A DNA stretch of 64,000 nucleotides. Source: Octopus sinensis. Its lineage: Eukaryota. The position numbers and the translations under genes were made by a program. The notes under the pieces were generated by a model. That model made no database searches, was not told the origin of the DNA, and saw nothing but the letters and a program-made list of their open reading frames with translations. How positions within the stretch are numbered: position 1 is the stretch's first letter; each line of letters begins with the position of its first letter. Of this stretch, positions 23,264-47,056 are shown piece after piece. The stretch is from the NCBI RefSeq assembly GCF_006345805.1, contig NW_021832536.1, forward strand, positions 49,791 to 113,790. Reading direction: 5' to 3'.

Positions 23264-23439
23264 GTAATCCTCATTTTTTCATTCATATTCTGTTGCAATG
23301 GTACTTTAGTTGTGTGTGTGTGTGTGTGTGCATGCAGGTGTATGTATGTGCATGTGTGTGTGTTTTGAGGGAATCCTGGAAACCCCCCACATGACTGAAG
23401 GTGGACTAACCAATTACAATAAAAAAAACTGAGGCAGCA

Positions 23440-23830: not shown

Positions 23831-23934
23831 AAATAAGAACTGAGTGAACTGTCAGCAGGTGGGGGTAGTTGTCGGTGTTAGTTTGAAGTGTGTTAGTTTA
23901 ACAGCTGGTAGTTGAACAGTGAATACTAAGTATC

Positions 23935-24712
23935 TATTTCTTTACTACCCACAAGATGCTAAACGCAGAGAGGACAAACAAGGACAGACAAATGGATTAA
24001 GTTGATTATATCGACCGCAGTGCGTATCCGGTACCTACTTAATTGATCCCCGAAAGGATGAAAGGCAAAGTTGACCTCGGCGGAATTTGAACTCAGAACG
24101 TAACGGCAGACGAAATACCTTTTTCTTTACTACCCACAAGGGGCCTAACGCAGAGAGGACAGACAAATGGATTAAGTTGATTATATCGACCCCAGTGCGT
24201 AACTGGTACTTACTTAATTGACCTCCGAAAGGATGAAAGGCAAAGTCGACCACGGCGGAATTTGAACCCAGAACGTAACGGCAGACGAAATACCTTTTTC
24301 TTTACTACCCACAAGGGGCTAAACACAGAGAGGACAAACAAGGACAGACAAATGGATTAAGTCGATTATATCGACCCCAGTGCGTAACTGGTACTTACTT
24401 AATTGATCCCCGAAAAGATGAAAGGCAAAGTCGACCTCGGCAGAATTCGAACTCAGAACGTAACGGCAGACGAAATACCTTTTTCTTTACTACCCACTAG
24501 GGGCTAAACGCAGAGAGGACAAACAAGGACAGACAAATGGATTAAGTCGATTATATTGACCCCAGTGCGTAACTGGTCCTTATTTAATCGACCCCGAAAG
24601 GATGAAAGGCAAAGTCGACCTCGGCGGAATTTGAACTCAGAACGTAACGGTAGACGAAATACAGCTACGCATTTCGCCCAGCCTGCTAACATTTCTGCCA
24701 GCTCGCCGCCTT
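23935..24712 (-). mobile_element. SINE family B, 4-5 tandem body units, reverse orientation
   Basis: GAAATAC anchors near 24112, 24289, 24473, 24657; head at the right end. Confidence 0.85.
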
Positions 24713-24849
24713 AATACTAAGTATCGTACCTACGTAAGAGTAGTACTGAGTGCATTCTGTGTTAACATATCTTTCTGCGATAGCTTGATTTTAGATAACC
24801 ATAACCAAGTATTTATTTGTGTAATGCCATTTTACACCAGATGTGTTGG

Positions 24850-25222
24850 AAGCACTCCGTCGGTTATGACGACGAGGGTTCCGGTTGATCCGATCAACGG
24901 AACAGCCTGCTTGTGAAATTAATGTGTAAGTGGCTGAGCACTCCACAGACACGTGTTCCCTGAACGTAGTTCTCGGGGATATTCAGCGTGACACAGAGAG
25001 TGACAAGGCCGGCCCTTTGAAATACAGGTACAACAGAAACAGGAAGTAAGAGTGAGAGAAAGTTGTGATGAAAGAGTACAGCAGGGATCACCACCATCCC
25101 CTGCCGGAGCCTCGTGGAGCTTTTAGGTGTTTTCGCTCAATAAACACTCACAACGCCCGGTCTGGGAATCAAAACCGCGATCCTACGACCGCGAGTCCGC
25201 TGCCCTAACCACTGGGACATTG
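24850..25222 (-). mobile_element. SINE family C, full length
   Basis: Reverse complement of 15204-15590. Confidence 0.85.
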
Positions 25223-26111
25223 TGCCTCCTACCAGATGTGTATACCCATGTCCTAACAGTGTGTGTGTGTTTCTTTGCATTGACCCCTTCGTAGGCAATG
25301 CTGTTGTTTTTGTATGATTCATAAGCAAAATATGTAGTAGCAGTTTGGTGTCCGAAAATGTCCATAATGCCAGCATAGAGAAAGCAGGGTTAATTAGAGT
25401 GATGAATACATATGATGGATTCTCCCATTGAAGATGAAATTGAAATCGATCAAAAAATCAATGGAAATTGTAGTTGTGATACCAGTGCCGGTGGGACGTA
25501 AAAGAACCATCCGAATGTGGCTGTTGCCAGCGCCGCCTCGACTGGCCTACATGCCGGTGGCACGTAAAAAGCACCAACCGATCGTGGCCCGTTGCCAGCC
25601 TCGCATGGCATCTGTGCTGGTGGGACGTAAAAAGCACTCCAGTCTGATCTAGCAGTGTTTCTACAGCTGGATGCCCTTCCTAACGCCAACCACTCTGTGA
25701 GTGTAGTGGGGTCTTTTTACGAGCCACCGGCACGGAAGCCAGTCAAGAAATTACTGGCATCGGCCACGTTCAGATGATGCTTTTTACATGTCGCCGGCAC
25801 AGGTATCAGAACTACAATTTCCATTTGATTTTTTGATGTTGATGTACTTGACTCAATAGGTCTCCTCAAGCACAGCAGGTCACCCTACGATCCAAGGTAA
25901 GCACAGCAGGTCGCCCTACGATCAAAGGTACTTTGGATGTGCTGGTGCTTCTATGTGAAGCCAGTGCAGGAAACAGCCATGAACTCACGTTATTTGTTGG
26001 GTCTTCACATTCACAGCATATCTCCAGAGGTCTTGGTCTTTCGTCATTGCCTCTATGAGGCAGAAACATATAGACATATAGACAGAAACTGAAAGAAGCC
26101 TGTCGTATATA

Positions 26112-26153
<42 letters not shown>

Positions 26154-26272
26154 GTGAGAATTTACAAAAAAAAAACAAAAGACGAAGACAGAGCCTATGC
26201 TCTTCGACAGAAAGGAACACAGAAATAAACAGGGACAGAAAATATATATATGTATATATATATATAGGCACA

Positions 26273-26675
26273 GGAGTGGCTGTGTGGTAAGTAGATTGCT
26301 CACCAACCACATGGTTCCGGGTTCAGTCCCACTGCGTGGCACTTTGGGCAAGTGTCTTCTACTATAGCCTTGGGCCGACCAAAGCCTTGTGAGTGGATTT
26401 GGTAGACGGAAACTGAAAGAAGCCTGTCGTATATATGTATATATATATATATGCGTGTGTGTGTTTGTGTGTCTGTGTTTGTCCCCCTAGCATTGCTTGA
26501 CAACCGATGCTGGTGTGTTTATGTCCCTGTTACTTAGCGGTTCGGCAAAAAGAGACCGATAGAATAAGTACTGGGCTTACAAAAAAGAATAAGTCCCGGG
26601 GTCGAGTTGCTCCATTAAAGGTGGTGCTCCAGCATGGCCGCAGTCAAATGACTGAAACAAGTAAAAGAGTAAAGA
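26273..26675 (+). mobile_element. SINE family A, full length
   Basis: Near-consensus copy. Confidence 0.9.
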
Positions 26676-26825
26676 GTATGTGTGTGTGTCTGTGTTTGTC
26701 CCCCCACCATCGCTTGTCTATATGTAGATATATCATTTTTTGTAAGACACACACACACACATGGTGAGAGTTACACACACACACAGAGTTTTATAGCTAT
26801 TCTTCCATTGATTTTCTTCTGACAG

Positions 26826-27008
26826 GTGTAAAGTGGAAGCAACGGTGACCAACATGACTACATCAGTTTGTGACTCGCTGTTTGAGAACAAACTCAGCCT
26901 CGTCGCTACGGAGATTCACATCTTCTCATTCTTCGGTGCCGGAATAGTCATGAGTTCCTGGTCTTGGAATAAAGCATCTCTTTCTGCCTGGGAACGATTC
27001 CTACGCAA
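26826..27008 (+). CDS. smo: Smoothened exon 8: ECL3, TM7, helix 8
   Basis: ttttcttctgacag|G; (M)CKVEAT...CDSLFENKLSLVATEIHIFSFFGAGIVMSSWSWNKASLSAWERFLR; AA|gtatgg; 183 nt, phase 2-2. Confidence 0.95.
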
Positions 27009-27054
27009 GTATGGCTTGACTTTTATTGCCCTTTTATTCTTTTGTTTTGTCGAT

Positions 27055-27315
27055 CTACCTACCTACCTGTATGTCTGTCTGTTTGTCTACCTACCTACCT
27101 ACCTACCTACCTGTATATATGTCTGTTTGTCTACCTACCTACCTACCTGTATGTTTGTATGTCTACCTACCTACCTACCTGTATGTCTGTCTGTTTGTCT
27201 GTCTGCCTATCTACCTGTATGTCTGTCTGTTTGTCTGTCTACCTACCTACCTGTATGTCTGTCTGTTTGTCTACCTACCTACCTACCTGTATGTCTGTCT
27301 GTTTGTCTGTCTACC
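27055..27315. repeat. Compound (CTAC)n/(TGTC)n microsatellite after exon 8
   Basis: Direct reading. Confidence 0.92.
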
Positions 27316-27779
27316 TATTAAGTTGTCCAGAAAGTTCTGAGCGTTTTTAACTTAAATCTTTTCATGCTTCATTGAACACACCTGAAACGTAACACACTTA
27401 AAACTTTGGCATTGCTTGAAGTGGTTGTGCATCTTGTCCTTTTTCCTGACTAAAACTAGATATGTCTTTCATTCTGGTGACCCTTTATTGATATTTGAAA
27501 TGGATGACCCAAAAACTTCATATTCGTGTTGTAATGTTTTTCTTCGAAATCAAATTCGATGACTGGCATCTGTGCTAGTGGAGCACTAAGAGCACCATTA
27601 GAGCGTGATCGTTGCCAGAGTGGCTAATTGGCGTTCATGCCGGTGGCATGTAAAAAGCACCATTCGAGCATGATCGTTACCAGCGTTGCCTTACTGGCAC
27701 CTGTGCCGGTGTGCAGGTGACATGTAAAAAAAAAACGATTTTTTTGTGGCCATTGCTAGTACCGCCTGACTGGCCCTGG

Positions 27780-30700
27780 TCATTGTAACCTCATGACCTT
27801 GTGTTATTGAAAACTTGTAACCTTGTGACATTGCAACCTCATGACCTTGTGTTATTGAAAACTTGTAACCTTGTGACATTGCAACCTTGTGACTCGTAAC
27901 CTTTTGTAACCTCATGACCTTGTGTTATTGAAAACTTGTAACCTTGTGACATTGCAACCTTGTGGCCTTGTGTCATTGTAACCTTGTGACTCGTAACCTT
28001 TTGTAACCTCATGACCTTGTGTTATTGAAAACTTGTAACCTTGTGACATTGCAACCTTGTGGCCTTGTGTCATTGTAACCTTGTGACTCGTAACCTTTTG
28101 TAACCTCATGACCTTGTGTTATTGAAAACTTGTAACCTTGTGACATTGCAACCTTGTGGCCTTGTGTCATTGGAACCTTGTGACTCGTAACCTTTTGTAA
28201 CCTCATGACCTTGTGTTATTGAAAACTTGTAACCTTGTGACATTGCAACCTTGTGGCCTTGTGTCATTGTAACCTTGTAACTTGTAACATTTTGTAACCT
28301 CATGACCTTGTGTTATTGAAATCTTGTAACCTTGTGACATTGTAACCTTGTGGCCTTGTGTCATTGTAACCTTGTGACTCGTAACCTTTTGTAACCTCAT
28401 GACCTTGTGTTATTGAAATCTCGTAACCTTGTGACATTGCAACCTTGTGGCCTTGTGTCATTGTAACCTTGTGACTCGTAACCTTTTGTAACCTCATGAC
28501 CTTGTGTTATTGAAAACTTGTAACCTTGTGACATTGTAACCTTGTGACATTGCAACCTTGTGGCCTTGTGTCATTGTAACCTTTTGTAACTCATGACCTT
28601 GTGTTATTGAAAATTGTAACCTTGTGACATTGTAACCTTGTGACATTGCAACCTTGTGACTCGTAACCTTTTGTAACCTCATGACCTTGTGTTATTGAAA
28701 ACTTGTAACCTTGTGACATTGCACCTTGTGGCCTTGTGTCATTGTAACTTTTGTAACCTCATGACCTTGTGTTATTGAAAACTTGTAACCTTGTGACATT
28801 GCAACCTTGTGGCTTGTGTCATTGTAACCTTTTGTAACCTCATGACCTTGTGTTATTGAAAACTTGTAACCTTGTGACATTGCAACCTTGTGACTTGTAA
28901 CCTTTTGTAACCTCATGACCTTGTGTTATTGAAAACTTGTAACCTTGTGACATTGCAACCTTGTGGCCTTGTGTCATTGTAACCTTTTGTAACCTCATGA
29001 CCTTGTGTTATTGAAAACTTGTAACCTTGTGACATTGCAACCTTGTGGCCTTGTGTCATTGTAACCTTTTGTAACCTCATGACCTTGTGTTATTGAAAAC
29101 TTGTATGTAACTTGTGACATTGCAACCTTGTGACTTGTAACTTTTGTAACCTCATGACCTTGTGTTATTGAAAACTTGTAACCTTGTGACATTGCAACCT
29201 TGTGTGACTTGTCTTGTAACCTTTTGTAACCTCATGACCTTGTGTTATTGAAAACTTGTAACCTTGTGACATTGCAACCTTGTGGCCTTGTGTCATTGTA
29301 ACCTTGTAACTTGTAACCTTTTGTACCTCATGACCTTTGTTGTGTAATTGAAAACTTGTAACCTTGTGACATTGCAACCTTGTGGCCTTGTGTCATTGTA
29401 ACCTTGTGACTCGTAACCTTTTGTAACCTCATGACCTTGTGTTATTGAAAACTTGTAACCTTGTGACATTGCAACCTTGTGGCCTTGTGTCATTGTAACC
29501 TTGTGACTCGTAACTTTTGTAACCTCATGACCTGTGTTATTGAAAACTTGTAACTTGGACATTGTAACCTTGTGACATTGCAACCTTGTGGCCTTGTGTC
29601 ATTGTAACCTGTGACTTGTAACCTTTTGTAACCTCATGACCTTGTGTTATTGAAAACTTGTAACCTTGTGACATTGCAACCTTGTGACTTGTAACCTTTT
29701 GTAACCTCATGACCTTGTGTTATTGAAAACTTGTAACCTTGTGACATTGTAACCTTGTGACATTGCAACCTTGTGGCCTTGTGTCATTGTAACCTTGTGA
29801 CTTGTAACCTTTTGTAACCTCATGACCTTGTGTTATTGAAAACTTGTAACCTTGTGACATTGCAACCTTGTGACTTGTAACCTTTTGTAACCTCATGACC
29901 TTGTGTTATTGAAAACTTGTAACCTTGTGACATTGTAACCTTGTGACATTGCAACCTTGTGGCTTGTGTCATTGTAACCTTGTGACTTGGTAACCTTTTG
30001 TAACCTCATGACCTTGTGTTATTGAAAATTGTAACCTTGTGACATTGCAACCTTGTGACTGTGAACCTTTTGTAACCTCATGACCTTGTGTTATTGAAAA
30101 CTGTAACCTTGTGACATTGCAACCTTGTGGTCCGCTTGTGGTGTCATTGTAACCTTGTGACTAGTAACCTTTTTAACCTCATGATCTTGTGTTATTGAAA
30201 ACTTGTAACCTTTGTGACATTGCAACCTGTGTGACTTGTAACCTTTTGTAACCTCATGACCTTGTGTTTAATTGAAAACTTGTAACCTTTGACATTGTAA
30301 CCTTGTGACATTGCAACCTTGTGGCCTTGTGTCATCATTGTAACCTTGTGACTTGTAACCTTTTGTAACCTCATGACCTTGTGTATTGAAAACTTGTAAC
30401 CTTGTGGACATTGCAACCTTGTGACTTGTAAACTTTTGTAACCTCATGACCTTCCCTTGTGGTTATTGAAAACTTGTAACCTGTGACATTGCAACCTTGT
30501 GGCCTTGTGTCATTGTACCTTGTGACTCGTAACCTTTTGTAACCTCATGATCTTGTGTTATTGAAAACTTGTAACCTTCTGTGACATGCAACCTTGTGAC
30601 TTGTAACCTTTTGTAACCTCATGACCTTGTGTTATTGAAAACTTGTAACCTTGTGACATTGTAACCTTGTGACATTGCAACCTTGTGGCCTTGTGTCATT

Positions 30701-33700
30701 GTAACCTTTTGTAACCTCATGACCTGGTGTTATTGAAAACTTGTAACCTTGTGACATTGCAACCTTGTGACTTGTAACCTTTTGTAACCTCATGACCTTG
30801 TGTTATTGAAACTTGTAACTTGTGACATTGTAACCTTGTGGCCTTGTGTCATTGTAACCTTGTGACTCGTAACCTTTTGTAACCTCATGATCTTGTGTTA
30901 TTGAAAACTTGTAACCTTGTGACATTGCAACCTTGTGACTTGTAACCTTTTGTAACCTCATGACCTTGTGTATTGAAAACTTGTAACCTTGTGACATTGC
31001 AACCTTGTGGCCTTGTGTCATTGTAACCTTTTGTAACCTCATGACCTTGTGTTATTGAAAACTTGTAACCTTGTGACATTGCAACCTTGTGACTTGTAAC
31101 CTTTGTAACCTCATGACCTGTGTTATTGAAAACTTGTAACCTTGTGACATTGTACCTTGTGACATTGCAACCTTGTGGCCTTGTGTCATTGTAACCTTGT
31201 GACTCGTAACCTTTTGTAACCTCATGACCTTGTGTTATTGAAAACTTGTAACCTTGTGACATTGCAACCTTGTGACTTGTAACCTTTTGTAACCTCATGA
31301 CCTTGTGTTATTGAAAACTTGTAACCTTGTGACATTGCAACCTTGTGACTTGTAACCTTTTGTAACCTCATGACCTTGTGTTATTGAAAACTTGTAACCT
31401 TGTGACATTGCAACCTTGTGACTTGTAACCTTTTGTAACCTCATGACCTTGTGTTATTGAAAACTTGTAACCTTGTGACATTGCAACCTTGTGGCCTTGT
31501 GTCATTGTAACCTTTTGTAACCTCATGACCTTGTGTTATTGAAAACTTGTAACCTTGTGACATTGCAACCTTGTGGCCTTGTGTCATTGTAACCTTTTGT
31601 AACCTCATGACCTTGTGTTATTGAAAACTTGTAACCTTGTGACATTGCAACCTTGTGGCCTTGTGTCATTGTAACCTTTTGTAACCTCATGACCTTGTGT
31701 TATTGAAAACTTGTAACCTTGTGACATTGCAACCTTGTGGCCTTGTGTCATTGTAACCTTTTGTAACCTCATGACCTTGTGTTATTGAAAACTTGTAACC
31801 TTGTGACATTGCAACCTTGTGGCCTTGTGTCATTGTAACCTTGTGACTCGTAACCTTTTGTAACCTCATGATCTTGTGTTATTGAAAACTTGTAACCTTG
31901 TGACATTGCAACCTTGTGACTTGTAACCTTTTGTAACCTCATGACCTTGTGTTATTGAAAACTTGTAACCTTGTGACATTGCAACCTTGTGGCCTTGTGT
32001 CATTGTAACCTTTTTAACCTCATGACCTTGTGTTATTGAAAACTTGTAACCTTGTGACATTGCAACCTTGTGGCCTTGTGTCATTGTAACCTTTGTAACC
32101 TCATGACCTTGTGTTATTGAAAACTTGTAACCTTGTGACATTGCAACCTTGTGGCCTTGTGTCATTGTAACCTTTGTAACCTCATGACCTGTGTTATTGA
32201 AAACTTGTAACCTTGTGACATTGCAACCTTGTGGCCTTGTGTCATTGTAACCTTTTGTAACCTCATGACCTTGTGTTATTGAAAACTTGTAACCTTGTGA
32301 CATTGCAACCTTGTGGCCTTGTGTCATTGTAACCTTTTGTAACCTCATGACCTTGTGTTATTGAAAACTTGTAACCTTGTGACATTGCAACCTTGTGGCC
32401 TTGTGTCATTGTAACCTTTTGTAACCTCATGACCTTGTGTTATTGAAAACTTGTAACCTTGTGACATTGCAACCTTGTGGCCTTGTGTCATTGTAACCTT
32501 TGTAACCTCATGACCTTGTGTTATTGAAAACTTGTAACCTTGTGACATTGCAACCTTGTGGCCTTGTGTCATTGTAACCTTGTGACTCGTAACCTTTTGT
32601 AACCTCATGATCTTGTGTTATTGAAAACTTGTAACCTTGTGACATTGCAACCTTGTGACTTGTAACCTTTTGTAACCTCATGACCTTGTGCTATTGAAAA
32701 CTTGTAACCTTGTGACATTGCAACCTTGTGGCCTTGTGTCATTGTAACCTTTTGTAACCTCATGACCTTGTGTTATTGAAAACTTGTAACCTTGTGACAT
32801 TGCAACCTTGTGGCCTTGTGTCATTGTAACCTTTTGTAACCTCATGACCTTGTGTTATTGAAAACTTGTAACCTTGTGACATTGCAACCTTGTGGCCTTG
32901 TGTCATTGTAACCTTTTGTAACCTCATGACCTTGTGTGTTATTGAAACTTGTAACCTTGTGACATTGCAACCTTGTGGCCTTGTGTCATTGTAACCTTGT
33001 GACTCGTAACCTTTTGTAACCTCATGATCTTGTGTTATTGAAAACTTGTAACTTGTGACATTGCAACCTTGTGACTTGTAACTTTTGTAACCTCATGACC
33101 TTGTGTTATTGAAAACTTGTAACTTGTGACATTGCAACCTTGTGCCTTGTGTCATTGTAACCTTTTGTAACCTCATGACCTTGTGTTATTGAAAACTTGT
33201 AACCTTGTGACATTGCAACCTTGTGGCCTTGTGTCATTGTAACCTTTTGTAACCTCATGACCTTGTGTTATTGAAAACTTGTAACCTTGTGACATTGCAA
33301 CCTTGTGGCCTTGTGTCATTGTAACCTTGTGACTTGTAACCTTTTGTAACCTCATGACCTTGTGTTATTGAAAACTTGTAACCTTGTGACATTGCAACCT
33401 TGTGGCCTTGTGTCATTGTAACCTTGTGACTCGTAACCTTTTGTAACCTCATGACCTTGTGTTATTGAAAACTTGTAACCTTGTGACATTGCAACCTTGT
33501 GGCCTTGTGTCATTGTAACCTTGTGACTCGTAACCTTTTGTAACCTCATGACCTTGTGTTATTGAAAACTTGTAACCTTGGACATTGCAACCTTGTGGCC
33601 TTGTGTCATTGTAACCTTGTGACTCGTAACCTTTTGTAACCTCATGACCTTGTGTTATTGAAAACTTGTAACCTTGTGACATTGCAACCTTGTGGCCTTG

Positions 33701-36700
33701 TGTCATTGTAACCTTGTGACTCGTAACCTTTTGTAACCTCATGACCTTGTGTTATTGAAAACTTGTAACCTTGTGACATTGCAACCTTGTGGCCTTGTGT
33801 CATTGTAACTTGTGACTCGTAACCTTTTGTAACCTCATGACCTTGTGTTATTGAAAACTTGTAACCTTGTGACATTGCAACCTTGTGACTTGTAACCTTT
33901 TGTAACCTCATGACCTTGTGTTATTGAAAACTTGTAACCTTGTGACATTGCAACTTGTGGCCTTGTGTCATTGTAACCTTGTGACTTGTAACCTTTTGTA
34001 ACCTCATGATCTTGTGTTATTGAAAACTTGTAACCTTGTGACATTGCAACCTTGTGGCCTTGTGTCATTGTAACCTTGTGACTCGTAACCTTTTGTACCT
34101 CATGACCTTGTGTTATTGAAAACTTGTAACCTTGTGACATTGCAACCTTGTGGCCTTGTGTCATTGTAACCTTGTGACTTGTAACCTTTTGTAACCTCAT
34201 GACCTTGTGTTATTGAAAACTTGTAACCTTGTGACATTGCAACCTTGTGGCCTTGTGTCATTGTAACCTTGTGACTCGTAACCTTTTGTAACCTCATGAC
34301 CTTGTGTTATTGAAAACTTGTAACCTTGTGACATTGCAACCTTGTGACTTGTAACCTTTTGTAACCTCATGACCTTGTGTTATTGAAAACTTGTAACCTT
34401 GTGACATTGCAACCTTGTGGCCTTGTGTCATTGTAACCTTGTGACTCGTAACCTTTTGTAACCTCATGATCTTGTGTTATTGAAAACTTGTAACCTTGTG
34501 ACATGGCAACCTTGTGGCCTTGTGTCATTGTAACCTTGTGACTCGTAACCTTTTGTAACCTCATGACCTTGTGTTATTGAAAACTTGTAACCTTGTGACA
34601 TTGCAACCTTGTGACTTGTAACCTTTTGTAACCTCATGACCTTGTGTTATTGAAAACTTGTAACCTTGTGACATTGCAACCTTGTGGCCTTGTGTCATTG
34701 TAACCTTGTGACTCGTAACCTTTTGTAACCTCATGATCTTGTGTTATTGAAAACTTGTAACCTTGTGACATTGCAACCTTGTGGCCTTGTGTCATTGTAA
34801 CCTTGTGACTCGTAACCTTTTGTAACCTCATGATCTTGTGTTATTGAAAACTTGTAACCTTGTGACATTGCAACCTTGTGGCCTTGTGTCATTGTAACCT
34901 TGTGACTCGTAACCTTTTGTACCTCATGACCTTGTGTTATTGAAAACTTGTAACCTTGTGACATTGCAACCTTGTGGCCTTGTGTCATTGTAACCTTGTG
35001 ACTCGTAACTTTTGTAACCTCATGACCTTGTGTTATTGAAAACTTGTAACCTTGTGACATTGCAACCTTGTGGCCTTGTGTCATTGTAACCTTGTGACTC
35101 GTAACCTTTTGTAACCTCATGACCTTGTGTTATTGAAAACTTGTAACCTTGTGACATTGCAACCTGTAGCCTTGTGTCATTGTAACCTTTTGTAACCTCA
35201 TGACCTTGTGTTATTGAAAACTTGTAACCTTGTGACATTGCAACCTTGTGGCCTTGTGTCATTGTAACCTTTTGTAACCTCATGACCTTGTGTTATTGAA
35301 AACTTGTAACCTTGTGACATTGCAACCTTGTGGCCTTGTGTCATTGTAACCTTTGTAACCTCATGACCTTGTGTTATTGAAAACTTGTAACCTTGTGACA
35401 TTGCAACCTTGTGGCCTTGTGTCATTGTAACCTTGTGACTCGTAACCTTTTGTAACCTCATGACCTTGTGTTATTGAAAACTTGTAACCTTGTGACATTG
35501 CAACCTTGTAGCCTTGTGTCATTGTAACCTTTTGTAACCTCATGACCTTGTGTCATTGGAACCTTGTAGCCTTGTGTCATTGTAACCTTGTGGCCTTGTG
35601 TCATTGTAACCTTGTGGCCTTGTGTCATTGGAACCTTGTAGCCTTGTGTCATTGGAACCTTGTGGCCTTGTGTCATTGTAACCTTGTGACTCGTAACCTT
35701 TTGTAACCTCATGACCTTGTGTTATTGAAAACTTGTAACCTTGTGACATTGCAACCTTGTAGCCTTGTGTCATTGTAACCTTTTGTAACCTCATGACCTT
35801 GTGTTATTGAAAACTTGTAACCTTGTGACATTGCAACCTTGTGGCCTTGTGTCATTGTAACCTTGTGACTCGTAACCTTTGTAACCTCATGATCTTGTGT
35901 TATTGAAAACTTGTAACCTTGTGACATTGCAACCTTGTGACTTGTAACCTTTTGTAACCTCATGACCTTGTGTTATTGAAAACTTGTAACCTTGTGACAT
36001 TGCAACCTTGTGACTTGTAACCTTTTGTAACCTCATGACCTTGTGTTATTGAAAACTTGTAACCTTGTGACATTGCAACCTTGTGGCCTGTGTCATTGTA
36101 ACCTTGTGACTCGTAACCTTTTGTAACCTCATGACCTTGTGTTATTGAAAACTGTAACCTTGTGACATTGCAACCTTGTGGCCTTGTGTCATTGTAACCT
36201 TGTGACTCGTAACCTTTTGTAACCTCATGACCTTGGTTATTGAAAACTTGTAACCTTGTGACATTGCAACCTTGTAGCCTTGTGTCATTGTAACCTTTTG
36301 TAACCTCATGACCTTGTGTTATTGAAAACTTGTAACCTTGTGACATTGCAACTTGTGGCCTTGTGACTCGTAACCTTTTGTAACCTCATGACCTTGTGTT
36401 ATTGAAAACTTGTAACCTTGTGACATTGCAACCTTGTGGCCTTGTGTCATTGTAACCTTTTGTAACCTCATGACTTGTGTTATTGAAAACTTGTAACTTG
36501 TGACATTGCAACCTTGTGGCCTTGTGTCATTGTAACTTGTGACTCGTAACCTTTTGTAACCTCATGACCTTGTGTTATTGAAAACTTGTAACCTTGTGAC
36601 ATTGCAACCTTGTGGCCTTGTGTCATTGTAACCTTTTGTAACCTCATGACCTTGTGTTATTGAAAACTTGTAACTTGTGACATTGCAACCTTGTGGCCTT

Positions 36701-39700
36701 GTGTCATTGTAACCTTGTGACTCGTAACCTTTTGTAACCTCATGATCTGTGTTATTGAAAACTTGTAACCTTGTGACATTGCAACCTTGTGACTTGTAAC
36801 CTTTTGTAACCTCATGACCTTGTGTTATTGAAAACTTGTAACCTTGTGACATTGCAACCTTGTGACTTGTAACCTTTTGTAACCTCATGACCTTGTGTTA
36901 TTGAAAACTTGTAACCTGTGACATTGCAACCTTGTGGCCTTGTGTCATTGTAACTTGTGACTCGTAACCTTTTGTAACCTCATGATCTTGTGTTATTGAA
37001 AACTTGTAACCTTGTGACATTGCAACCTGTAGCCTTGTGTCATTGTAACCTTTTGTAACCTCATGACCTTGTGTTATTGAAAACTTGTAACCTTGTGACA
37101 TTGCAACCTTGTGGCCTTGTGACTCGTAACCTTTTGTAACCTCATGACCTTGTGTTATTGAAAACTTGTAACCTTGTGACATTGCAACCTTGTGGCCTTG
37201 TGTCATTGTAACCTTTTGTAACCTCATGACCTTGTGTTATTGAAAACTTGTAACCTTGTGACATTGCAACCTTGTGGCCTTGTGTCATTGTAACCTTGTG
37301 ACTCGTAACCTTTTGTAACCTCATGACCTTGTGTTATTGAAAACTTGTAACCTTGTGACATTGCAACCTTGTGGCCTTGTGTCATTGTAACCTTTTGTAA
37401 CCTCATGACCTTGTGTTATTGAAAACTTGTAACCTTGTGACATTGCAACCTTGTGGCCTTGTGTCATTGTAACCTTGTGACTCGTAACCTTTTGTAACCT
37501 CATGATCTTGTGTTATTGAAAACTTGTAACCTTGTGACATTGCAACCTTGTGACTTGTAACCTTTTGTAACCTCATGACCTTGTGTTATTGAAAACTTGT
37601 AACCTTGTGACATTGCAACCTTGTGACTTGTAACCTTTTGTAACCTCATGACCTTGTGTTATTGAAAACTTGTAACCTTGTGACATTGCAACCTTGTGGC
37701 CTTGTGTCATTGTAACCTTGTGACTCGTAACCTTTTGTAACCTCATGATCTTGTGTTATTGAAAACTTGTAACCTTGTGACATTGCAACCTTGTGACTTG
37801 TAACCTTTTGTAACCTCATGACCTTGTGTTATTGAAAACTTGTAACCTTGTGACATTGCAACCTTGTGGCCTTGTGTCATTGTAACCTTTTGTAACCTCA
37901 TGACCTTGTGTTATTGAAAACTTGTAACCTTGTGACATTGCAACCTTGTGGCCTGTGTCATTGTAACCTTGTGACTCGTAACCTTTTGTAACCTCATGAT
38001 CTTGTGTTATTGAAAACTTGTAACCTTGTGACATTGCAACCTTGTGACTTGTAACCTTTTGTAACCTCATGACCTTGTGTTATTGAAAACTTGTAACCTT
38101 GTGACATTGCAACCTTGTGACTTGTAACCTTTTGTAACCTCATGACCTTGTGTTATTGAAAACTTGTAACCTTGTGACATTGCAACCTTGTGGCCTTGTG
38201 TCATTGTAACCTTGTGACTCGTAACCTTTTGTAACCTCATGACCTTGTGTTATTGAAAACTTGTAACCTTGTGACATTGTAACCTTGTGACATTGCAACC
38301 TTGTGGCCTTGTGTCATTGTAACCTTTTGTAACCTCATGACCTTGTGTTATTGAAAACTTGTAACCTTGTGACATTGCAACCTTGTGACTTGTAACCTTT
38401 TGTAACCTCATGACCTTGTGTTATTGAAAACTTGTAACCTTGTGACATTGCAACCTTGTGACTTGTAACCTTTTGTAACCTCATGACCTTGTGTTATTGA
38501 AAACTTGTAACCTTGTGACATTGCAACCTTGTGACTTGTAACCTTTGTAACCTCATGACCTTGTGTTATTGAAAACTTGTAACCTTGTGACATTGCAACC
38601 TTGTGGCCTTGTGTCATTGTAACCTTGTGACTCGTAACCTTTTGTAACCTCATGACCTTGTGTATTGAAAACTTGTAACTTGTGACATTGTAACCTTGTG
38701 ACATTGCAACTTGTGGCCTTGTGTCATTGTAACCTTTTGTAACCTCATGACCTTGTGTTATTGAAAACTTGTAACCTTGTGACATTGCAACCTGTGACTT
38801 GTAACTTTTGTAACCTCATGACCTTGTGTTATTGAAAACTTGTAACCTTGTGACATTGCAACCTTGTGACTTGTAACCTTTTGTAACCTCATGACCTTGT
38901 GTTATTGAAAACTTGTAACCTTGTGACATTGCAACCTTGTGACTTGTAACCTTTTGTAACCTCATGACCTTGTGTTATTGAAAACTTGTAACCTTGTGAC
39001 ATTGCAACCTTGTGGCCTTGTGTCATTGTAACCTTGTAACTTGTAACATTTTGTAACCTCATGACCTTGTGTTATTGAAATCTTGTAACCTTGTGACATT
39101 GCAACCTTGTGGCCTTGTGTCATTGGAACCTTGTGACTCGTAACCTTTTGTAACCTCATGACCTTGTGTTATTGAAAACTTGTAACCTTGTGACATTGCA
39201 ACCTTGTGACTTGTAACCTTTTGTAACCTCATGACCTTGTGTTATTGAAAACTTGTAACCTTGTGACATTGCAACCTTGTGACTTGTAACCTTTGTAACC
39301 TCATGACCTTGTGTTATTGAAAACTTGTAACCTTGTTACATTGCAACCTTGTGACTTGTAACCTTTGTAACCTCATGACCTTGTGTTATTGAAAACTTGT
39401 ACCTTGTGACATTGCAACCTTGTGACTTGTAACCTTTTGTAACCTCATGACCTTGTGTTATTGAAAACTTCTAACCTTGTGACATTGCAACCTTGTGACT
39501 TGTAACCTTTTGTAACCTCATGACCTTGTGTTATTGAAAACTTGTAACCTTGTGACATTGCAACCTTGTGACTTGTAACCTTTTGTAACCTCATGACCTT
39601 GTGTTATTGAAAACTTGTAACCTTGTGACATTGCAACCTTGTGACTTGTAACCTTTTGTAACCCATGACCTTGTGTTATTGAAAACTTCTAACTTGTGAC

Positions 39701-41226
39701 ATTGCAACCTTGTGACTTGTAACCTTTTGTAACCTCATGACCTTGTGTTATTGAAAACTTCTAACCTTGTGACATTGCAACCTTGTGACTTGTAACCTTT
39801 TGTAACCTCATGACCTTGTTTATTGAAAACTTGTAACCTTGTGACATTGCAACCTTGTGACTTGTAACCTTTTGTAACCTCATGACTTGTGTTATTGAAA
39901 ACTTGTAACCTTGTGACATTGCAACCTTGTGGCCTTGTGTCATTGTAACCTTGTGACTTGTAACCTTTTGTAACCTCATGATCTGTGTTATTGAAAACTT
40001 GTAACCTTGTGACATTGCAACCTTGTGACTTGTAACCTTTTGTACCTCATGACCTGTGTTATTGAAAACTTGTAACCTTGTGACATTGCAACCTTGTGAC
40101 TTGTAACCTTTTGTAACCTCATGACCTTGTGTTATTGAAAACTTGTAACCTTGTGACATTGCAACCTTGTGACTTGTAACCTTTTGAACCTCATGACCTT
40201 GTGTTATTGAAAACTTGTAACCTTGTGACATTGCAACCTTGTGACTGTAACCTTTTGTAACCTCATGACCTTGTGTTATTGAAAACTTGTAACCTGTGAC
40301 ATTGCAACCTTGTGGCCTTGTGTCATTGTAACCTTTTGTAACCTCATGACCTTGTGTATTGAAAACTTGTAACCTTTTGACATTGCAACCTTGTGACATT
40401 GCAACCTTGTGACTTGTAACCTTTTGTAACCTCATGACCTTGTGTTATTGAAAACTTGTAACCTTGTGACATTGCAACCTTGTGACTTGTAACCTTTTGT
40501 AACCTCATACCTTGTGTTATTGAAAACTTGTAACCTTGTGACATTGTAACCTTGTGACATTGCAACCTTGTGGCCTGTGTCATTGTAACCTTTTGTAACC
40601 TCATGACCTGTGTGTTATTGAAAACTTGTAACCTTGTGACATTGCAACCTTGTGACTTGGAACCTTTTGTAACCTCATGACCTTGTGTTATTGAAAACTT
40701 GTAACCTTGTGACATTGCAACCTTGTGACTTGTAACCTTTTGTAACCTCATGACCTTGTGTTATTGAAAACTTGTAACCTTGTGACATTGTAACCTTGTG
40801 ACATTGCAACCTTGTGGCCTTGTGTCATTGTAACCTTTTGTAACCTCATGACCTTGTGTTTTTATTGAAAACTTGTAACCTTGTGACATTGCAACCTTGT
40901 GACTTGTAACCTTTTGTAACCTCATGACCTTGTGTTATTGAAAACTTGTAACCTTGTGACATTGCAACCTTGTGACTTGTAACCTTTTGTAACCTCATGA
41001 CCTTGTGTTATTGAAAACTTGTAACCTTGTGACATTGTAACTTGTGACATTGTAACCTTGTGACATTGTAACCTTTGTGGCCTTGTGTCATTGTAACCTT
41101 TTGTAACCTCATGACATTGTGTTATTGAAAAATTGTAACCTTGTGACATTGCAACCTGTGGCCTTGTGTCATTGTAACCTTTTGTAACCTCATGACCTTG
41201 TGTTATTGAAAACTTATGACCTTGTG
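27780..41226. repeat. ~13.4-kb tandem satellite in smo intron 8; monomers of 73, 82 and 97 bp plus variants
   Basis: Shared 61-bp core TTGTAACCTCATGACCTTGTGTTATTGAAAACTTGTAACCTTGTGACATTGCAACCTTGTG plus optional modules; periods measured between TCATGA anchors. Confidence 0.98.
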
Positions 41227-41266
41227 TCAGTATGAGAGGTCACTAAACATGTTGTTTCTATTGTAG

Positions 41267-41403
41267 AGTATTCCGTAAACCATCCAGTCGTACGGTGAAG
41301 CTGAAACGGCACAAAATGATTGCTAAAGCATTTGCTAAGAGGAAGGAAATAAACAGTGGTCGCTTTTCCATCAGTTTCTACAGCACCCATGATGACCCCT
41401 TAG
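41267..41403 (+). CDS. smo: Smoothened exon 9: proximal cytoplasmic tail (not in the ORF track)
   Basis: ttgtttctattgtag|A; (K)VFRKPSSRTVKLKRHKMIAKAFAKRKEINSGRFSISFYSTHDDPL(G), matching the Smo KMIAKAF...S..HDDP motif; G|gtaagg; 137 nt, phase 2-1. Confidence 0.95.
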
Positions 41404-42032
41404 GTAAGGTGTGTCACTCAGTCAGTGTGTATGCGTGTATATGTAGGTGTGTGTGTGTGTTCATCATCGTTTAACGTCCGTTCTCCATGCTAGCATGGGT
41501 TGGACGGTTCGACCGGGGATCTGGGAAGCCAGAAGGCTGCGCCAGGCCCAGTCTTATCTGGCAGTGTTTCTACAGCTGGATGCCCTTCCTAACGCCAACC
41601 ACTCCGTAAGTGTAGTGGGTGCTTTTTACGTGCCACCTACACAGGTGCCAGGCGAGGCTGGCAACGGCCATGGTCGGATTGGTGTATTTTACGTGCCACC
41701 GGCACGGAAGCCAGTCGAGGCGGTGCTGGCATCGGCCACGAGTCGGATAGTGCTTTTTACGTACCACCAGACCAGGGATCCTGGCTGGTTCAATTCGATT
41801 TCGCTTGCCCCAACATGTCTTTGCAAGCAAAGGGGGTTGGCATGGGTGCCTGTCGTCGGATGAGGTTCTATATCGACTTTGCTTGCCTCAACAGGTCTTT
41901 GTGTCCAAGGGAGGAAAGGCATTCATAAGTGGATATATGCTTATTTACAAGTCCAAATGTGCCATGCACATATTGGAACTGGTAATAACATCACATTTCT
42001 ACACTTCACTGCTTAGTGTTCCCCCTCCATAA

Positions 42033-42336
42033 TCTTTATATATAAAATTGAAGTTGTGTGTGTGAGACTCTGTCTCCTCCGGTTTAGATTCCTAACTACT
42101 CCCACATTTTGCGGTGCAGTTTAACCAAAAGCGGGTATCTTATAGTCATTCATATCGAGCACTTCTGGGTATTAGTGCGCGTCTACGATGAGTTTACAAT
42201 TAAAAAAAAAATTTACCATCATTTTTCCGCATTTTTAATGATTTTTGCTCGGGTTATATAAGGGAAATAACTCTCTAAAAATGCTTATATAGTTATTTCC
42301 CTTACAAACTCGAGCAACGCCAGGTGATACTGCTAG
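42033..42336 (+). mobile_element. Non-autonomous Helitron
   Basis: A|TC start (ATCTTTATATATAAAA), subterminal hairpin TAAGGGAAATAACT/AGTTATTTCCCTTA, GC-rich CTCGAGCAACGCCAGG, ends CTAG|T. Confidence 0.75.
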
Positions 42337-42342
42337 TCTTTA

Positions 42343-42514
42343 TATATAATTATAATGATAAGGGTTTTTTGCAACAAGTTGCTTAAACCACAAGCCTGTG
42401 GAGACTTATTTTTGTAGTAAAAGAAATAGTAGCCCTTTGACTGCTATTTCTAATATTTTCGATATGTGCTTTAAGCAACTTGTTGCAAAAAACCCTTATT
42501 ATTATAATTATATA
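42343..42514. mobile_element. Small foldback/MITE with ~45-bp inverted termini
   Basis: TATAATTATAATGATAAGGGTTTTTTGCAACAAGTTGCTTAAA mirrored at 42470-42514. Confidence 0.75.
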
Positions 42515-42605
42515 AATTTTTACTGAATATGGTCCTTTTCCATACCAAAAATACTACTAGGTGAAATTTATTGATTTTATTAAATTAATTATATTTCACC
42601 CTTTA

Positions 42606-42659
<54 letters not shown>

Positions 42660-42885
42660 GGTGCTGAAAAGATTCTTGGCTTTGGGTAAAAGCCAACTCA
42701 GGAAGATCTGTTAATTATGGTTTTATTCAATATATTCCCTTCTCAGATTCACAAACTTGTTGCAGCAGTCCTTCAGTTTCTCAAAGCCCAGTGAAAGAAC
42801 TCAGAAGGTTGGGTGATACCCTTAAGGCCAGGAACTTTTCAGCACCACTTATATAGACATACATAGATACACACACACACACATG

Positions 42886-42927
<42 letters not shown>

Positions 42928-43062
42928 ACACACACACACACACACACTCATACATACATGCACGTAGTGTACCCTTATCAGACAGGTAGTCATGATGGGT
43001 ATATTGGGCTTTGTATATTTTACCCCTGTGTCACTTTGATGGCATGCACTGCTCTCTCACTC

Positions 43063-43109
<47 letters not shown>

Positions 43110-43888
43110 TAATAGTAATAATAATAATAATAATAATCATCTTTTCTACTATAGGCACTAGGCCTGAAATTTGGGAGGGACTAAGTCAATCACATTGACC
43201 CCAGTACTCAACTGGTACTTATTTCATCGACCCCAAAAGGATGAAAAGCAAAGTTGACCATGACGGGATTTGATCTCAGAATGTAAAGATGGACGAAATA
43301 CAGCTAAGCATTTTGCCCGGCATGCTAACGATTCTACCAGCTCACCACCACCACCACCACCACTAACAACAACAACAAATTAATTAATTAATTCTCGTTT
43401 ATTGGCCACAAGGGCTAACAAAAATCAAATAAAACATTTAAGGACAAAATACAGGACGAAAGTTACAAAAAGGGTTTTGTCCGTTAGAAAAGTCCGTGTA
43501 AAAATTCCAGAGATAACAACGAAAATATAACAAGTAAAAACTCCCAATAGGGGGAGGCGCTTCGAAAGGTTACTCGTGGAAAAACCCATAAAAGCCATGG
43601 GAGCCTGGTCAAAAGTGGGGTAGTGAGCCCCTTTCTCCTTTTATATTTACCTTTTTTGTCACAGGTGTATCCTCAGAATTGGTCCCTTCACACTGGCCAT
43701 TCTTCCGACATTCACCCACCTTTCAATGAATTTGCTAGGAGACAGCACTTTCCCTCTCTACTCTGGTCAAAAGGGGGATAGAGAGCCCTTTTCTCTTTTT
43801 ATATAATAATCACTCATTTTTGATATTTCGTGAAAAGAAATAAATGCTAGGATTCTTGTCAACGTTTTCGTTTTTCCATGTTTTTCAG

Positions 43889-44026
43889 GGATGAAGTTTG
43901 ATTTAAATAGTGTCAGCTCCGGAGATGTTTCTTCTGAGTTTGCTGCCAACATGCCAAAATTGGTTCGAAGACGTGGAGGTATGTTTCAGCCCATGGCCGG
44001 AACCCTGAGGAGATATTCGGACTCTG
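43889..44026 (+). CDS. smo: Smoothened exon 10: C-tail with PKI-like motif; alternative in-frame donor after 43978
   Basis: gtttttcag|GG; (G)MKFDLNSVSSGDVSSEFAANMPKLVRRRGGMFQPMAGTLRRYSDS; two phase-1 donors, GAG|gtatgt (43979) and CTG|gtgtgt (44027). The 3' end is the uncertain part. Confidence 0.85.
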
Positions 44027-45070
44027 GTGTGTATTTTGGTCGACATTATTATTTCAAGCAAAAAAAAAAAAAAAAAAATTTGGCTTATTTTTGTTGTCTT
44101 TTAACCCCGAGTCAGCCTAACCCAGCAGATCTATGATCAAAGGTGTTCCAGATTTGACCATCCTATCTTTTATTCAGACATTGTCTATCTAGGGCTAGAT
44201 TAACAAATGTATTCTCTCTCTTGTGTAACTTCTGATCAGCTCTAATCTAACAAATCTGTTCAAAGATGTTCCAGCTGTGGCCATCCCATCTTTTATTTAG
44301 ACATAAATTAAAAGAGAGGACAAACAAGGACAGACAAACGGATTAAGTCAATTATATCGACCCCAATGCGTAACTGGTACTTAATTTATCGACCCTGAAA
44401 GGATGAAAGGCAAAATTGACCTCGGCGGAATTTGAACTCAGAACGTAACGGCAGACGAAATATGGCTAGGCATTTCGCCCGGCGTGCTAACGTTTCTGCC
44501 AGCTCACCGTCTTTTGGGAGTGTTGTACCATGTTTGCTCATGACTGCACAAGCACTTAAAACACTTAGTGGATGCATGGTGCATGCCATCAGATGATATT
44601 TACTTATGAGCGACAGTTATAATTTCTATGATACCATACTGATACCACTATGCCCACAATATCCTGTTAACAATAAATGGCCTACAACACCCCTATCTAC
44701 AACTCCTAACCTACATTTCTTAATCTAACTCTCCCCTGTTTACAATACCCAAGACTTCCAAGATTAAGTTTTCAAAGTGGAACAAAATTGCTTTTTGGGT
44801 CCTAGGTGTTCTTTCAAAATTCAAGGGAGAGCAAGGTATTTTTTTTAAGGAAAGAGCTCATCAGGAATTCTCAGATCCTTTCTTAACTGGCTAAATAAAC
44901 GGGCTGAATTATATGCCTTAGCAACACACTTTCTAAAAACCCTGTTTACAATACCCAACATATGTTACCCTATCAACAATCCCATATCAACAATACTCTG
45001 TCTACAGTTCTCTATTTTCTACTGTCCCCTATTTATCACAAGCCCTTTCCCTTTGGCTCTCCCTTTGGCT

Positions 45071-46450
45071 CTCCATTAAATTTTAACTGACAATAACAGA
45101 GTTAGTTTAATAACAATTTTTAATTATATTTAAATTTTTATTCTCCATTAAATTTTTACTGACAATAACAAAGTTAGTTTAATAACAATTTTTAATTATA
45201 TTTTAATTTTTATTCTCCATTAAATTTTAACTGACAATAACAGAGTTAGTTTAATAACATAATTTTTAATTATAATTTAATTGTTATTCTCCATTAAATT
45301 TTAACTGATAATAACAAAGTTAGTTTAATAAAATAATTTTTAATTATATTTTAATTTTTATTCTCCATTAAATTTTTACTGACAATAACAGAGTTAGTTT
45401 AATAACAATTTTTAATTATATTTTAATTTTTATTCTCCATTAAATTTTTACTGACAATAACAGAGTTAGTTTAATAACATAACTTTTAATTATATTTTAA
45501 TTTTTATTCTCCATTAAATTTTAATTGACAATAACAAAGTTAGTTTAATAGCATAATTTTTAATTATATTTTAATTTTTATTCTCCATTAAATTTTAACT
45601 GACAATAACAGAGTTAGTTTAATAACAATTTTTAATTATATTTTAATTTTTATTCTCCATTAAATTTTAACTGACAATAACAGAGTTAGTTTAATAACAA
45701 TTTTTAATTATATTTTAATTTTTCTTTTCCATTAAATTTTTACTGACAATAACAGAGTTAGTTTAATAACATAATTTTTAATTATATTTTAATTTTTATT
45801 TTCCATTAAATTTTAACTGACAATAACAGAGTTAGTTTAATAACATAACTTTTAATTATATTTTAATTTTTATTCTCCATTAAATTTTAACTGATAATAA
45901 CAGAGTTAGTTTAATAACATAATTTTTAATTATATTTTTACTGACAATAACAGAGTTAGTTTAATAACGTAATTTTTAATTATATTTTAATTTTTATTCT
46001 CCATTAAATTTTTACTGACAATAACAGAGTTAGTTTAATAACATAATTTTTAATTATATTTTTACTGACAATAACAGAGTTAGTTTAATAACATAAATTT
46101 TAATTATATTTTAATTGTTATTCTCCATTAAATTTTAACTGATAATAACAGAGTTAGTTTAATAACATAATTTTTAATTATATTTTTACTGACAATAACA
46201 GAGTTAGTTTAATAACGTAATTTTTAATTATATTTTAATTTTTATTCTCCATTAAATTTTTACTGACAATAACAAAGTTAGTTTAATAACAATTTTTAAT
46301 TATATTTTAATTGTTATTCTCCATTAAATTTTAACTGTTAATAACATAACTTTTAATTATATTTTAATTTTTATTCTCCATTAAATTTTTACTGACAATA
46401 ACAGAGTTAGTTTAATAACACAATTTTTAATTATATTTTAATTTTTATTC
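45071..46450. repeat. AT-rich minisatellite, 72-74 bp, about 20 copies, intron 10
   Basis: CTCCATTAAATTTTAACTGACAATAACAGAGTTAGTTTAATAAC... recurs at 45071, 45143, 45215 and onward; some copies have an internal deletion. Confidence 0.95.
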
Positions 46451-46472
46451 TGCCCGTCTCTCCTCATTATAG

Positions 46473-47056
46473 ATGTCGCATCAGTGACGTCACGGATATT
46501 TTCCATGGAAAACAGTGATGGGGAGAAAATAGATGATGGGAACGATCAAAAACTGAAGAAGAAAAAGAAGAAGAAGAAACGTTTTTCTAACAACCGTGTC
46601 AAACCTCAGTTGACCCCTTTGGTTTTAGCCATGCAGAAAGGGGCACAGGAGTTCCTTCGGAGCAGTAAAAGACACAAGCGTCGTGGTAGTGATACGTCTG
46701 GTATCAGTCGGGCTTCGGCTCAGAGCATCCATTTCTCTCTCGACCGAAACAGCAGCGCTGATGCTCTGTCTATTTCTTCGATGAAACCAAATTCGGAATT
46801 GAACATTCATAAAATCCACAAGACAGAAACAAAATCTAAAAGAGTGACAAACTTTGCTATTTTCACAGCGAATTCTTTATTGCCGGGATCTGTACAAGAC
46901 AACGATGGCCCACAAGGGACGAATTTAGCCATGGGAGACATGACCGCCGGTCATTCATCCTGTACGCAGTGTGGTGCCCAAAGTGTTTTCCCACCTGAAA
47001 TTGCCATTTTTAACATAGAAGACGAAACTTCATCAACCACTTCTTCTTCTTGCTGA
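46473..47056 (+). CDS. smo: Smoothened exon 11: distal C-tail to stop
   Basis: ctctcctcattatag|AT, phase 1; (D)VASVTSRIFSM...KL(K8)RF...KRRGSDTS...SSSC then TGA; closes the reading frame. Confidence 0.88.

What the first reader, a model, noticed from the sequence alone, without database searches (positions are those of the whole stretch)
43889..44026. Competing in-frame donor in smo exon 10 could switch off PKA inhibition
Seen: two donors 48 nt apart, both phase 1 and compatible with exon 11. The proximal one, GAG|gtatgt (43979), fits the consensus better than the distal CTG|gtgtgt (44027). The long form reads F-x9-RRGGM...RRYSDSD; the short form reads RRRG-D-VAS. Known: vertebrate Smo inhibits PKA-C through a PKI-like motif (W...RRGAI) at this position. 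Inferred: the short isoform would put Asp at the pseudosubstrate P-site and delete the RRYS PKA site, so one splice choice could uncouple Smo from PKA. The distal donor gives 138 nt, close to the ~135 nt I recall for the human exon, so it is probably ancestral.
Basis: partly seen in the sequence, partly recalled or inferred. Interest (0 to 1): 0.7.

Follow-up and report, generated by a model that had tools for sequence, protein, structure and literature searches.

The report
Cryptic in-frame donor in Smoothened exon
A mollusc Smoothened exon that encodes the receptor's protein-kinase-A decoy motif contains a second, frame-preserving GT site, but this site looks like a by-product of the Gly-Gly-Met-Phe codons and nothing here shows it is spliced.

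Summary
Exon 10 (43889-44026, + strand) of an 11-exon, 816-aa Smoothened gene has two phase-1 GT sites 48 nt apart: GAG|gtatgt at 43979 and CTG|gtgtgt at 44027. Both join exon 11 (46473) in frame.

The exon encodes a PKI-like pseudosubstrate motif (F-x9-RRGGM) and, ten residues on, RRYSDSD. Both are conserved across about 100 Smoothened orthologues.

The distal donor is ancestral. The exon is 138 nt and phase 1-1 in five mollusc loci, and 135 nt and phase 1-1 in a vertebrate.

The internal GT comes from the codons GGA GGT ATG T. It is about as strong as the real donor (U1 duplex -6.9 vs -6.6 kcal/mol). It ranks second of 154 exonic GTs in this gene, and three of these score at or above the real exon-10 donor.

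The only close relative available keeps the GT, with a chance probability of about 0.12. Four of five other molluscs lack it. Every orthologue and gene model recovered carries the long form.

No transcript data could be reached, so use of the site is untested. The most likely reading is an incidental cryptic site in a constitutive exon. A regulated switch that uncouples Smoothened from PKA remains possible, at roughly 10%.

The parts
2731..47056 (+). Smoothened gene, 11 coding exons: 2731-3201, 6735-6947, 8023-8201, 9744-9963, 15845-15968, 20036-20128, 23155-23263, 26826-27008, 41267-41403, 43889-44026, 46473-47056. Product 816 aa.
   Evidence: tblastn of Pecten and Sinanodonta Smoothened against the window. 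Splice junctions chosen. The CDS of 2451 nt is open. Pfam Fz (1.3e-13) and Frizzled (1.5e-88).
43889..44026 (+). Exon 10, 138 nt, phase 1-1. It encodes (G)MKFDLNSVSSGDVSSEFAANMPKLVRRRGGMFQPMAGTLRRYSDS(D).
   Evidence: An exon of the same length and phase is present in L001, L002 (Elysia), L004 and L007; it is 141 nt in L005 and 135 nt in the vertebrate L008.
43939..43983 (+). Coding sequence of the PKI-like pseudosubstrate motif F-AANMPKLVR-RRGGM: P-13 Phe, P-3 and P-2 Arg, P0 Gly, P+1 Met.
   Evidence: Alignment of 103 orthologues: P-3 R in 103/103, P-2 R in 99/103, P0 A or G in 103/103, P+1 L/I/V/M in 103/103, P-13 W or F in 100/103. Motif definition in 10.1101/2021.07.05.451193.
43976..43984 (+). 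Internal GT site GAG|GTATGT (cut after 43978). It is formed by the codons GGA GGT ATG T (Gly-Gly-Met-Phe).
   Evidence: It is identical in L001 at 544-552. It is absent from L002, L003, L004 and L007, and has a weaker context in L005.
44008..44026 (+). Coding sequence of RRYSDS(D), a PKA-consensus RRxS site followed by an acidic/Ser run. The short form would delete it.
   Evidence: the two Arg columns are R in 51/69 and 49/69, and the Ser column is S in 57/67.
44024..44032 (+). Distal, ancestral donor CTG|GTGTGT (cut after 44026).
   Evidence: The position is conserved after ...YSDS G| in all mollusc loci examined, and the phase is conserved in a vertebrate.
46458..46474 (+). Acceptor of exon 11 (ctctcctcattatag|AT). 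It is shared by both possible junctions.

Best explanation
Exon 10 is a constitutive Smoothened exon whose boundaries date back to the bilaterian ancestor. It encodes a PKA pseudosubstrate (PKI-like) motif, RRGGM with an aromatic residue at P-13. By homology with vertebrate SMO, this motif would occupy the PKA-C active site. Ten residues further on it encodes an RRxS phospho-acceptor cluster of the kind phosphorylated in Drosophila Smo. The internal GT at 43979 is an incidental consequence of encoding Gly-Gly-Met-Phe with the two commonest Gly codons (GGA GGT ATG T). It is a cryptic or decoy donor that is unused, or used only at noise level. The 138-nt long form is the functional product. Shown here: the sequence, the reading frames, the gene model, conservation of the motif and conservation of the exon boundaries. 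Inferred: PKA binding by the mollusc motif, and non-use of the internal GT.
For: The exon's length and phase are conserved: 138 nt and phase 1-1 in the window, L001, Elysia L002, L004 and L007, 141 nt in L005, and 135 nt and phase 1-1 in a vertebrate. The 16 residues the short form would delete are 16/16 identical in L001, although 24 of 39 degenerate codons in the exon differ. RRYSDSD is conserved in bivalves, gastropods and a bryozoan. All recovered gene models or transcripts that cross the exon 10/11 junction are long, none of the aligned orthologue sequences (105 rows from 103 proteins) shows a 16-residue gap, and the members of the 90% clusters read (including proteins from several RefSeq-annotated molluscs) include no shorter form at this exon. 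P0 is Ala or Gly in 103/103 and never Asp, so the short product would break an invariant feature. The GT needs only GGA plus GGT, with p of about 0.12 from this gene's codon usage. Comparably strong exonic GTs occur elsewhere in the CDS, at 9749 and 6772. Four of five other molluscs encoding GG[MV] lack the GT. In L001 the true donor (CAG|GTAAGA, -11.0 kcal/mol) far outcompetes the same internal site (-6.9).
Against: In the window the true donor is mediocre (CTG|GTGTGT; PWM 7.70, -6.6 kcal/mol) and the internal site is equal or slightly better (8.85, -6.9), so real competition is physically plausible. The 9-mer GAGGTATGT is identical in the only close relative while the flanking synonymous sites have changed. 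GTATG-type donors are used in this gene (exon 8, CAA|GTATGG). No transcript data were available, so non-use is an inference.
Confidence: 0.72

Rival explanations
1. Regulated alternative 5' splice site. Choosing 43979 instead of 44027 yields a Smoothened whose pseudosubstrate reads RRG-D-V and which lacks the RRYS site. This isoform could neither inhibit PKA-C nor be phosphorylated at that cluster, so it would act as a signalling-dead or dominant-negative receptor.
For: The site is in frame and as strong as the real donor. It is conserved in L001. The real donor has weakened in the window's lineage compared with L001 and the other molluscs. Asp at P0 is unprecedented among 103 orthologues, and even A635S at P0 abolishes signalling in mouse SMO, so the isoform would plausibly lose the function.
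Against: There is no transcript evidence at all. The conservation rests on two synonymous sites in one relative (p about 0.12). The site is absent from most other molluscs. In L001 the true donor is much stronger, so a shared regulated event is unlikely. The deleted residues are under strong purifying selection. One in-frame decoy of this strength is about what chance predicts for this gene.
Confidence: 0.09
2. Splicing noise. The internal GT is used in a small, unregulated fraction of transcripts. The resulting in-frame short protein is tolerated because it is rare.
For: The two donors are of similar strength and lie 48 nt apart. The in-frame product escapes NMD, so low-level products would persist (inference).
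Against: As for the regulated case, there are no data on use. When two donors are of comparable strength, the downstream, intron-proximal one is usually preferred (general knowledge of 5' splice-site competition, not tested here).
Confidence: 0.19

Closest known systems
Vertebrate SMO PKI motif (mouse SMO 615-638; Happ et al., bioRxiv 10.1101/2021.07.05.451193; Walker et al., PLoS Biol 2024, PMC11322411)
   Same: It lies at the same position in the proximal C-tail and in the homologous exon (135 vs 138 nt, phase 1-1). It has an aromatic residue at P-13, Arg at P-3 and P-2, Gly at P-1, a small non-phosphorylatable P0 and a hydrophobic P+1.
   Different: P-13 is Phe rather than Trp, P0 is Gly rather than Ala, and P+1 is Met rather than Ile. 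An RRYSDSD site follows that vertebrates lack. PKA-C binding has not been tested for any mollusc Smo.
PKIalpha and PKA-RI inhibitor sites (pseudosubstrates RRNAI and RRGAI; RI-beta has Gly at P0, from my own knowledge)
   Same: It has the R-R-x-(A/G)-hydrophobic core and an upstream aromatic anchor.
   Different: It sits in the tail of a class F GPCR. The affinity of the vertebrate SMO motif is modest (KD about 0.8-0.9 uM) and needs avidity from GRK2 phosphorylation.
Drosophila Smo PKA/CK1 phosphorylation clusters (S667/S687/S740; from my own knowledge of the literature)
   Same: An RRxS/RKxS site followed by Asp/Ser residues lies just downstream of the RR(G/M)A(L/I) motif. Arthropod-like orthologues read RRNSxDSEISxS at the aligned columns.
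   Different: The mollusc has RRYS-DS-D-VAS-VTS, so the +3 spacing of CK1 sites is only partly kept. No phosphorylation data exist.
Exonic decoy (cryptic) 5' splice sites and alternative 5' splice-site exons
   Same: A GT with a good consensus lies inside a coding exon, 48 nt upstream of the authentic donor and in frame.
   Different: There is no evidence of use, so it cannot be filed as an alternative 5' splice-site event.

Membership tests
Smoothened (class F GPCR) | N-terminal Fz cysteine-rich domain plus Frizzled/Smoothened 7TM region | tested here: met
   Pfam PF01392 (1.3e-13) and PF01534 (1.5e-88) on the 816-aa model.
Smoothened (class F GPCR) | Orthology to Smoothened rather than to Frizzled receptors | tested here: met
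   The C-tail query recovers only Smo-type tails. The best named hits are 'smoothened homolog' proteins of Pecten, Aplysia and Physella.
SMO PKI (PKA pseudosubstrate) motif | Arg at P-3 and P-2, non-phosphorylatable P0, hydrophobic P+1, aromatic P-13 | tested here: met
   F-AANMPKLVR-RRGGM. Column statistics over 103 orthologues. Criteria taken.
SMO PKI (PKA pseudosubstrate) motif | [quoted passage not shown] | not testable with these tools
   This needs peptide binding or kinase assays.
Functional alternative 5' splice site | A consensus GT that preserves the reading frame with the downstream exon | tested here: met
Functional alternative 5' splice site | Splice junction observed in transcripts | not testable with these tools
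   No cephalopod transcript or protein spanning the exon is in the searchable collections. All orthologous models are long.
Functional alternative 5' splice site | Conservation of the alternative site beyond what coding constraint explains | tested here: inconclusive
   It is kept in L001 (2 of 2 free synonymous sites, p about 0.12). It is absent from 4 of 5 other molluscs.
Drosophila-type PKA/CK1 phospho-cluster | RRxS followed by Ser/Thr at +3 spacing | tested here: inconclusive
   RRYS is present and widely conserved. The downstream serines fall at +2, +6 and +9, so the spacing is only partly CK1-like.

The most novel reading that the evidence does not exclude
In this lineage the ancestral exon-10 donor has decayed from GTAAG to GTGTGT. 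The pre-existing in-frame GT inside the Gly-Gly-Met codons may now compete with it. The product would be a natural Smoothened isoform with Asp at the pseudosubstrate P-site and without the RRYS site. That would be a splice-encoded on/off switch for SMO-PKA coupling, and a ready-made natural experiment on whether the PKI mechanism operates outside vertebrates.
Probability: 0.09. Interest if true: 0.6.

Novelty: new member of a known kind. Interest (0 to 1): 0.25.

Why it matters
What is solidly present is a mollusc orthologue of the SMO PKI motif. It lies in a homologous exon of conserved length and phase, next to a fly-type RRxS site. This supports the view that the ancestral bilaterian Smoothened tail carried both a PKA decoy and a PKA target. 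If the internal donor were really used, it would be the first natural isoform that selectively disables the decoy, and it would make the role of SMO-PKA pseudosubstrate inhibition in a non-vertebrate directly testable. As things stand it is only a cheap hypothesis to check against RNA-seq data.

Tried and rejected
(1) I looked for transcript or protein evidence of either isoform in cephalopods. The word-indexed search with the long C-tail gave only 3 hits, none spanning exon 10 in a close relative. The window's own last-exon ORF is not on record. The exhaustive HMMER search returned no hit above 78% identity.

(2) I looked for more cephalopod DNA with degenerate back-translated patterns in JGI metagenomes (two scans) and GTDB genomes. 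All returned nothing.

(3) Local RNA accessibility of the two donors gave opposite answers in the window and in L001, so I judged it uninformative.

(4) A literature search for Smoothened alternative splicing at the C-tail and for cephalopod Smoothened found nothing relevant to this site.

(5) I first thought the vertebrate ...QDISVTPV might align with the mollusc ...SDVASVTS, which would make the short form 'vertebrate-like'. The conserved intron position rules this out.

(6) The Ruditapes RefSeq isoforms X1 and X2 differ at the N-terminus, not at this exon.

(7) MaxEntScan and SpliceAI were not available. The PWM is an approximate human-derived matrix written from memory, so I use only its ranks together with the U1 duplex energy.

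Full report
**Observation.** The exon starts at 43889 after tttttcag and ends at 44026 before GTGTGT. An internal GAG|GTATGT has its G at 43979, 48 nt upstream of the distal donor. The next exon starts at 46473 after ttatag. Both junctions are phase 1.
- Long form: ...SSEFAANMPKLVRRRGGMFQPMAGTLRRYSDSDVASVTS.
- Short form: ...KLVRRRGDVASVTS. It is 16 residues shorter and the junction codon becomes GAT (Asp).

**Gene context.** I aligned bivalve Smoothened proteins to the window and picked frame-consistent GT-AG junctions. This gave an 11-exon, 2451-nt CDS on the + strand (2731-47056) encoding 816 aa. The product has a Pfam Fz domain and a Frizzled/Smoothened 7TM region.

The nearest named proteins are 'smoothened homolog' of Pecten, Sinanodonta, Aplysia, Physella and Littorina, at no more than 71% identity in this region. 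No named cephalopod protein is in the collections. The window is clearly molluscan and fits a class missing from the named set, but I could not confirm 'cephalopod' by name.

**What the exon encodes.** An exhaustive HMMER search with the proximal C-tail returned 178 relatives. I realigned 103 of them over exon 10.
- The vertebrate sequences read SSAWAQHVTKMVARRGAIL opposite the window's SSEFAANMPKLVRRRGGMF.
- The criteria for the mouse SMO PKI motif are a non-phosphorylatable P0 (A635), Arg at P-2 and P-3, a hydrophobic P+1 and an aromatic P-13. The WRR and A635S mutants are inactive.
- The mollusc motif meets every sequence criterion.
- Across the 103 orthologues, P-3 is R in 103, P-2 is R in 99, P0 is A (72) or G (31) and never S, T or D, P+1 is always L/I/V/M, and P-13 is W (76) or F (24).
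- Ten residues downstream, RR[YN]S-DS-[DE] is conserved in most invertebrate orthologues (the two Arg columns are R in 51/69 and 49/69, and Ser in 57/67). From my own knowledge, this corresponds in position to the first PKA/CK1 cluster of Drosophila Smo.

**Which donor is ancestral.** The distal one.
- The exon is 138 nt and phase 1-1 in the window, in the closest relative L001, in Elysia marginata (L002) and in two unnamed molluscs (L004, L007).
- It is 141 nt in a further mollusc (L005/L006).
- In all the mollusc loci the donor follows ...[YH]SDS G|.

**Is the internal GT special?** It is made by the codons GGA GGT ATG T.
- Codon chance: GGA and GGT are this gene's two commonest Gly codons (0.31 and 0.38), so the 9-mer has a chance of about 0.12 given the peptide.
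- Strength by PWM: on an approximate PWM it scores 8.85 against 7.70 for the true exon-10 donor.
- Strength by U1 pairing: the duplex energies are equal, -6.9 vs -6.6 kcal/mol.
- Decoy census: among 154 exonic GTs in the CDS it ranks second, and three score at or above the true exon-10 donor. The other two (9749 and 6772) are out of frame. One in-frame decoy of this strength is about what chance predicts.
- Close relative: in L001 the 9-mer is identical. L001 has 44 of 46 identical residues in the exon but differs at 24 of 39 degenerate codons. Only two synonymous sites are free, so the chance of keeping both is about (13/37)^2 = 0.12.
- L001's true donor is CAG|GTAAGA (-11.0 kcal/mol), which should dominate there.
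- Other molluscs: the P-1 and P0 Gly codons are GGG GGA (Elysia), GGG GGC or GGG GGA (L003), GGA GGA (L004) and GGA GGA (L007). Only L005/L006 has GGT GGT, giving the weaker GTG|GTATGA.
- The site is therefore not conserved outside the window's immediate group.

**Is the short form ever seen?** Not in anything I could reach.
- No gene model or transcript that crosses the exon 10/11 junction has a gap there. This covers Pecten, Argopecten, Sinanodonta, Potamilus, Batillaria, Littorina, Aplysia, Elysia, Bugula, a Logan transcript and many arthropod-like sequences.
- The members of the 90% clusters I read, which include proteins from several RefSeq-annotated molluscs, contain no form that is shorter at this exon.
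- The 16 residues at stake are 16/16 identical between the window and L001.
- This does not test the window's species directly, because no transcript-derived sequence from it or a close relative is in the collections. Pattern scans of metagenome and genome collections found no further relatives.

**Mechanism and verdict.** The best-supported reading is a constitutive exon encoding a PKA-C pseudosubstrate plus an adjacent RRxS phospho-site. Its internal GT is a coding by-product that acts as a silent or near-silent decoy (confidence about 0.72).

The main point against this reading is that the true donor in this lineage is only mediocre (GTGTGT) and no stronger than the decoy. Some use is therefore plausible: noise-level use about 0.19, a regulated switch about 0.09. 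If the site is used, the predicted consequence is reasonable. Either register of RRRG-D-V puts Asp at P0 or at P+1, and the RRYS site is lost. That consequence is inferred from vertebrate data and from the invariance of P0 and P+1.

**Novelty.** The motif is a new member of a known kind: it is an orthologue of the SMO PKI motif. The competing donor is an unverified hypothesis, and splice-junction counts would settle it.

Noticed in passing
L003:2800-3451: In an unnamed mollusc contig (ENA ERZ26168041, 3.29x coverage) the exon-10 orthologue sits in two tandem arrays. One has a 73-nt period (x2.6) and covers the acceptor and first codons. The other has a 111-nt period (x3.9), is in frame, and covers the PKI-motif half plus the donor. 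This could be a real duplication or an assembly artefact.
   Followed up: partly
window:44008-44026 with 43939-43983: The mollusc Smo tail carries a vertebrate-type PKA pseudosubstrate (RRGGM) and, ten residues later, a fly-type RRxS site in the same exon. Most invertebrate orthologues have both, whereas the vertebrates have only the first.
   Followed up: partly
window:9746-9754 and 6769-6777: Two other exonic GTs score as strongly as real donors on the rough PWM: CTG|GTGAGA at 9749 (9.33) and CGG|GTGTGT at 6772 (8.11). Both are out of frame with the true donor of their exon.
   Followed up: no
window:23264 and 20129: Two real donors of the gene model are weak: CAT|GTAATC (exon 7; PWM 3.76, U1 duplex -1.5 kcal/mol) and TTG|GTCAGT (exon 6). 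The exon 7/8 junction rests on alignment to Pecten Smo and should be checked against transcripts.
   Followed up: no
window:59857-60480: A reverse-transcriptase (RVT_1) fragment lies on the + strand downstream of smo. It is probably a decayed retroelement.
   Followed up: partly
window:172-879(-), 24075-24711(+), 44420-44593(+), 62033-62450(-): A dispersed or tandem repeat family gives recurring pseudo-ORFs such as ...RQSRPRRNLNSERNGRRNT... in introns and flanks.
   Followed up: no
window:44060-44079: An A20 run lies in intron 10, about 35 nt downstream of the distal donor.
   Followed up: no
L008:5960-5968: The vertebrate exon also has a phase-1 GT, one codon upstream, in the P-1 Gly codon (CGA G|GT GCC). 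Its downstream context is poor. This shows how readily RRG(G/A) coding creates in-frame GTs.
   Followed up: no
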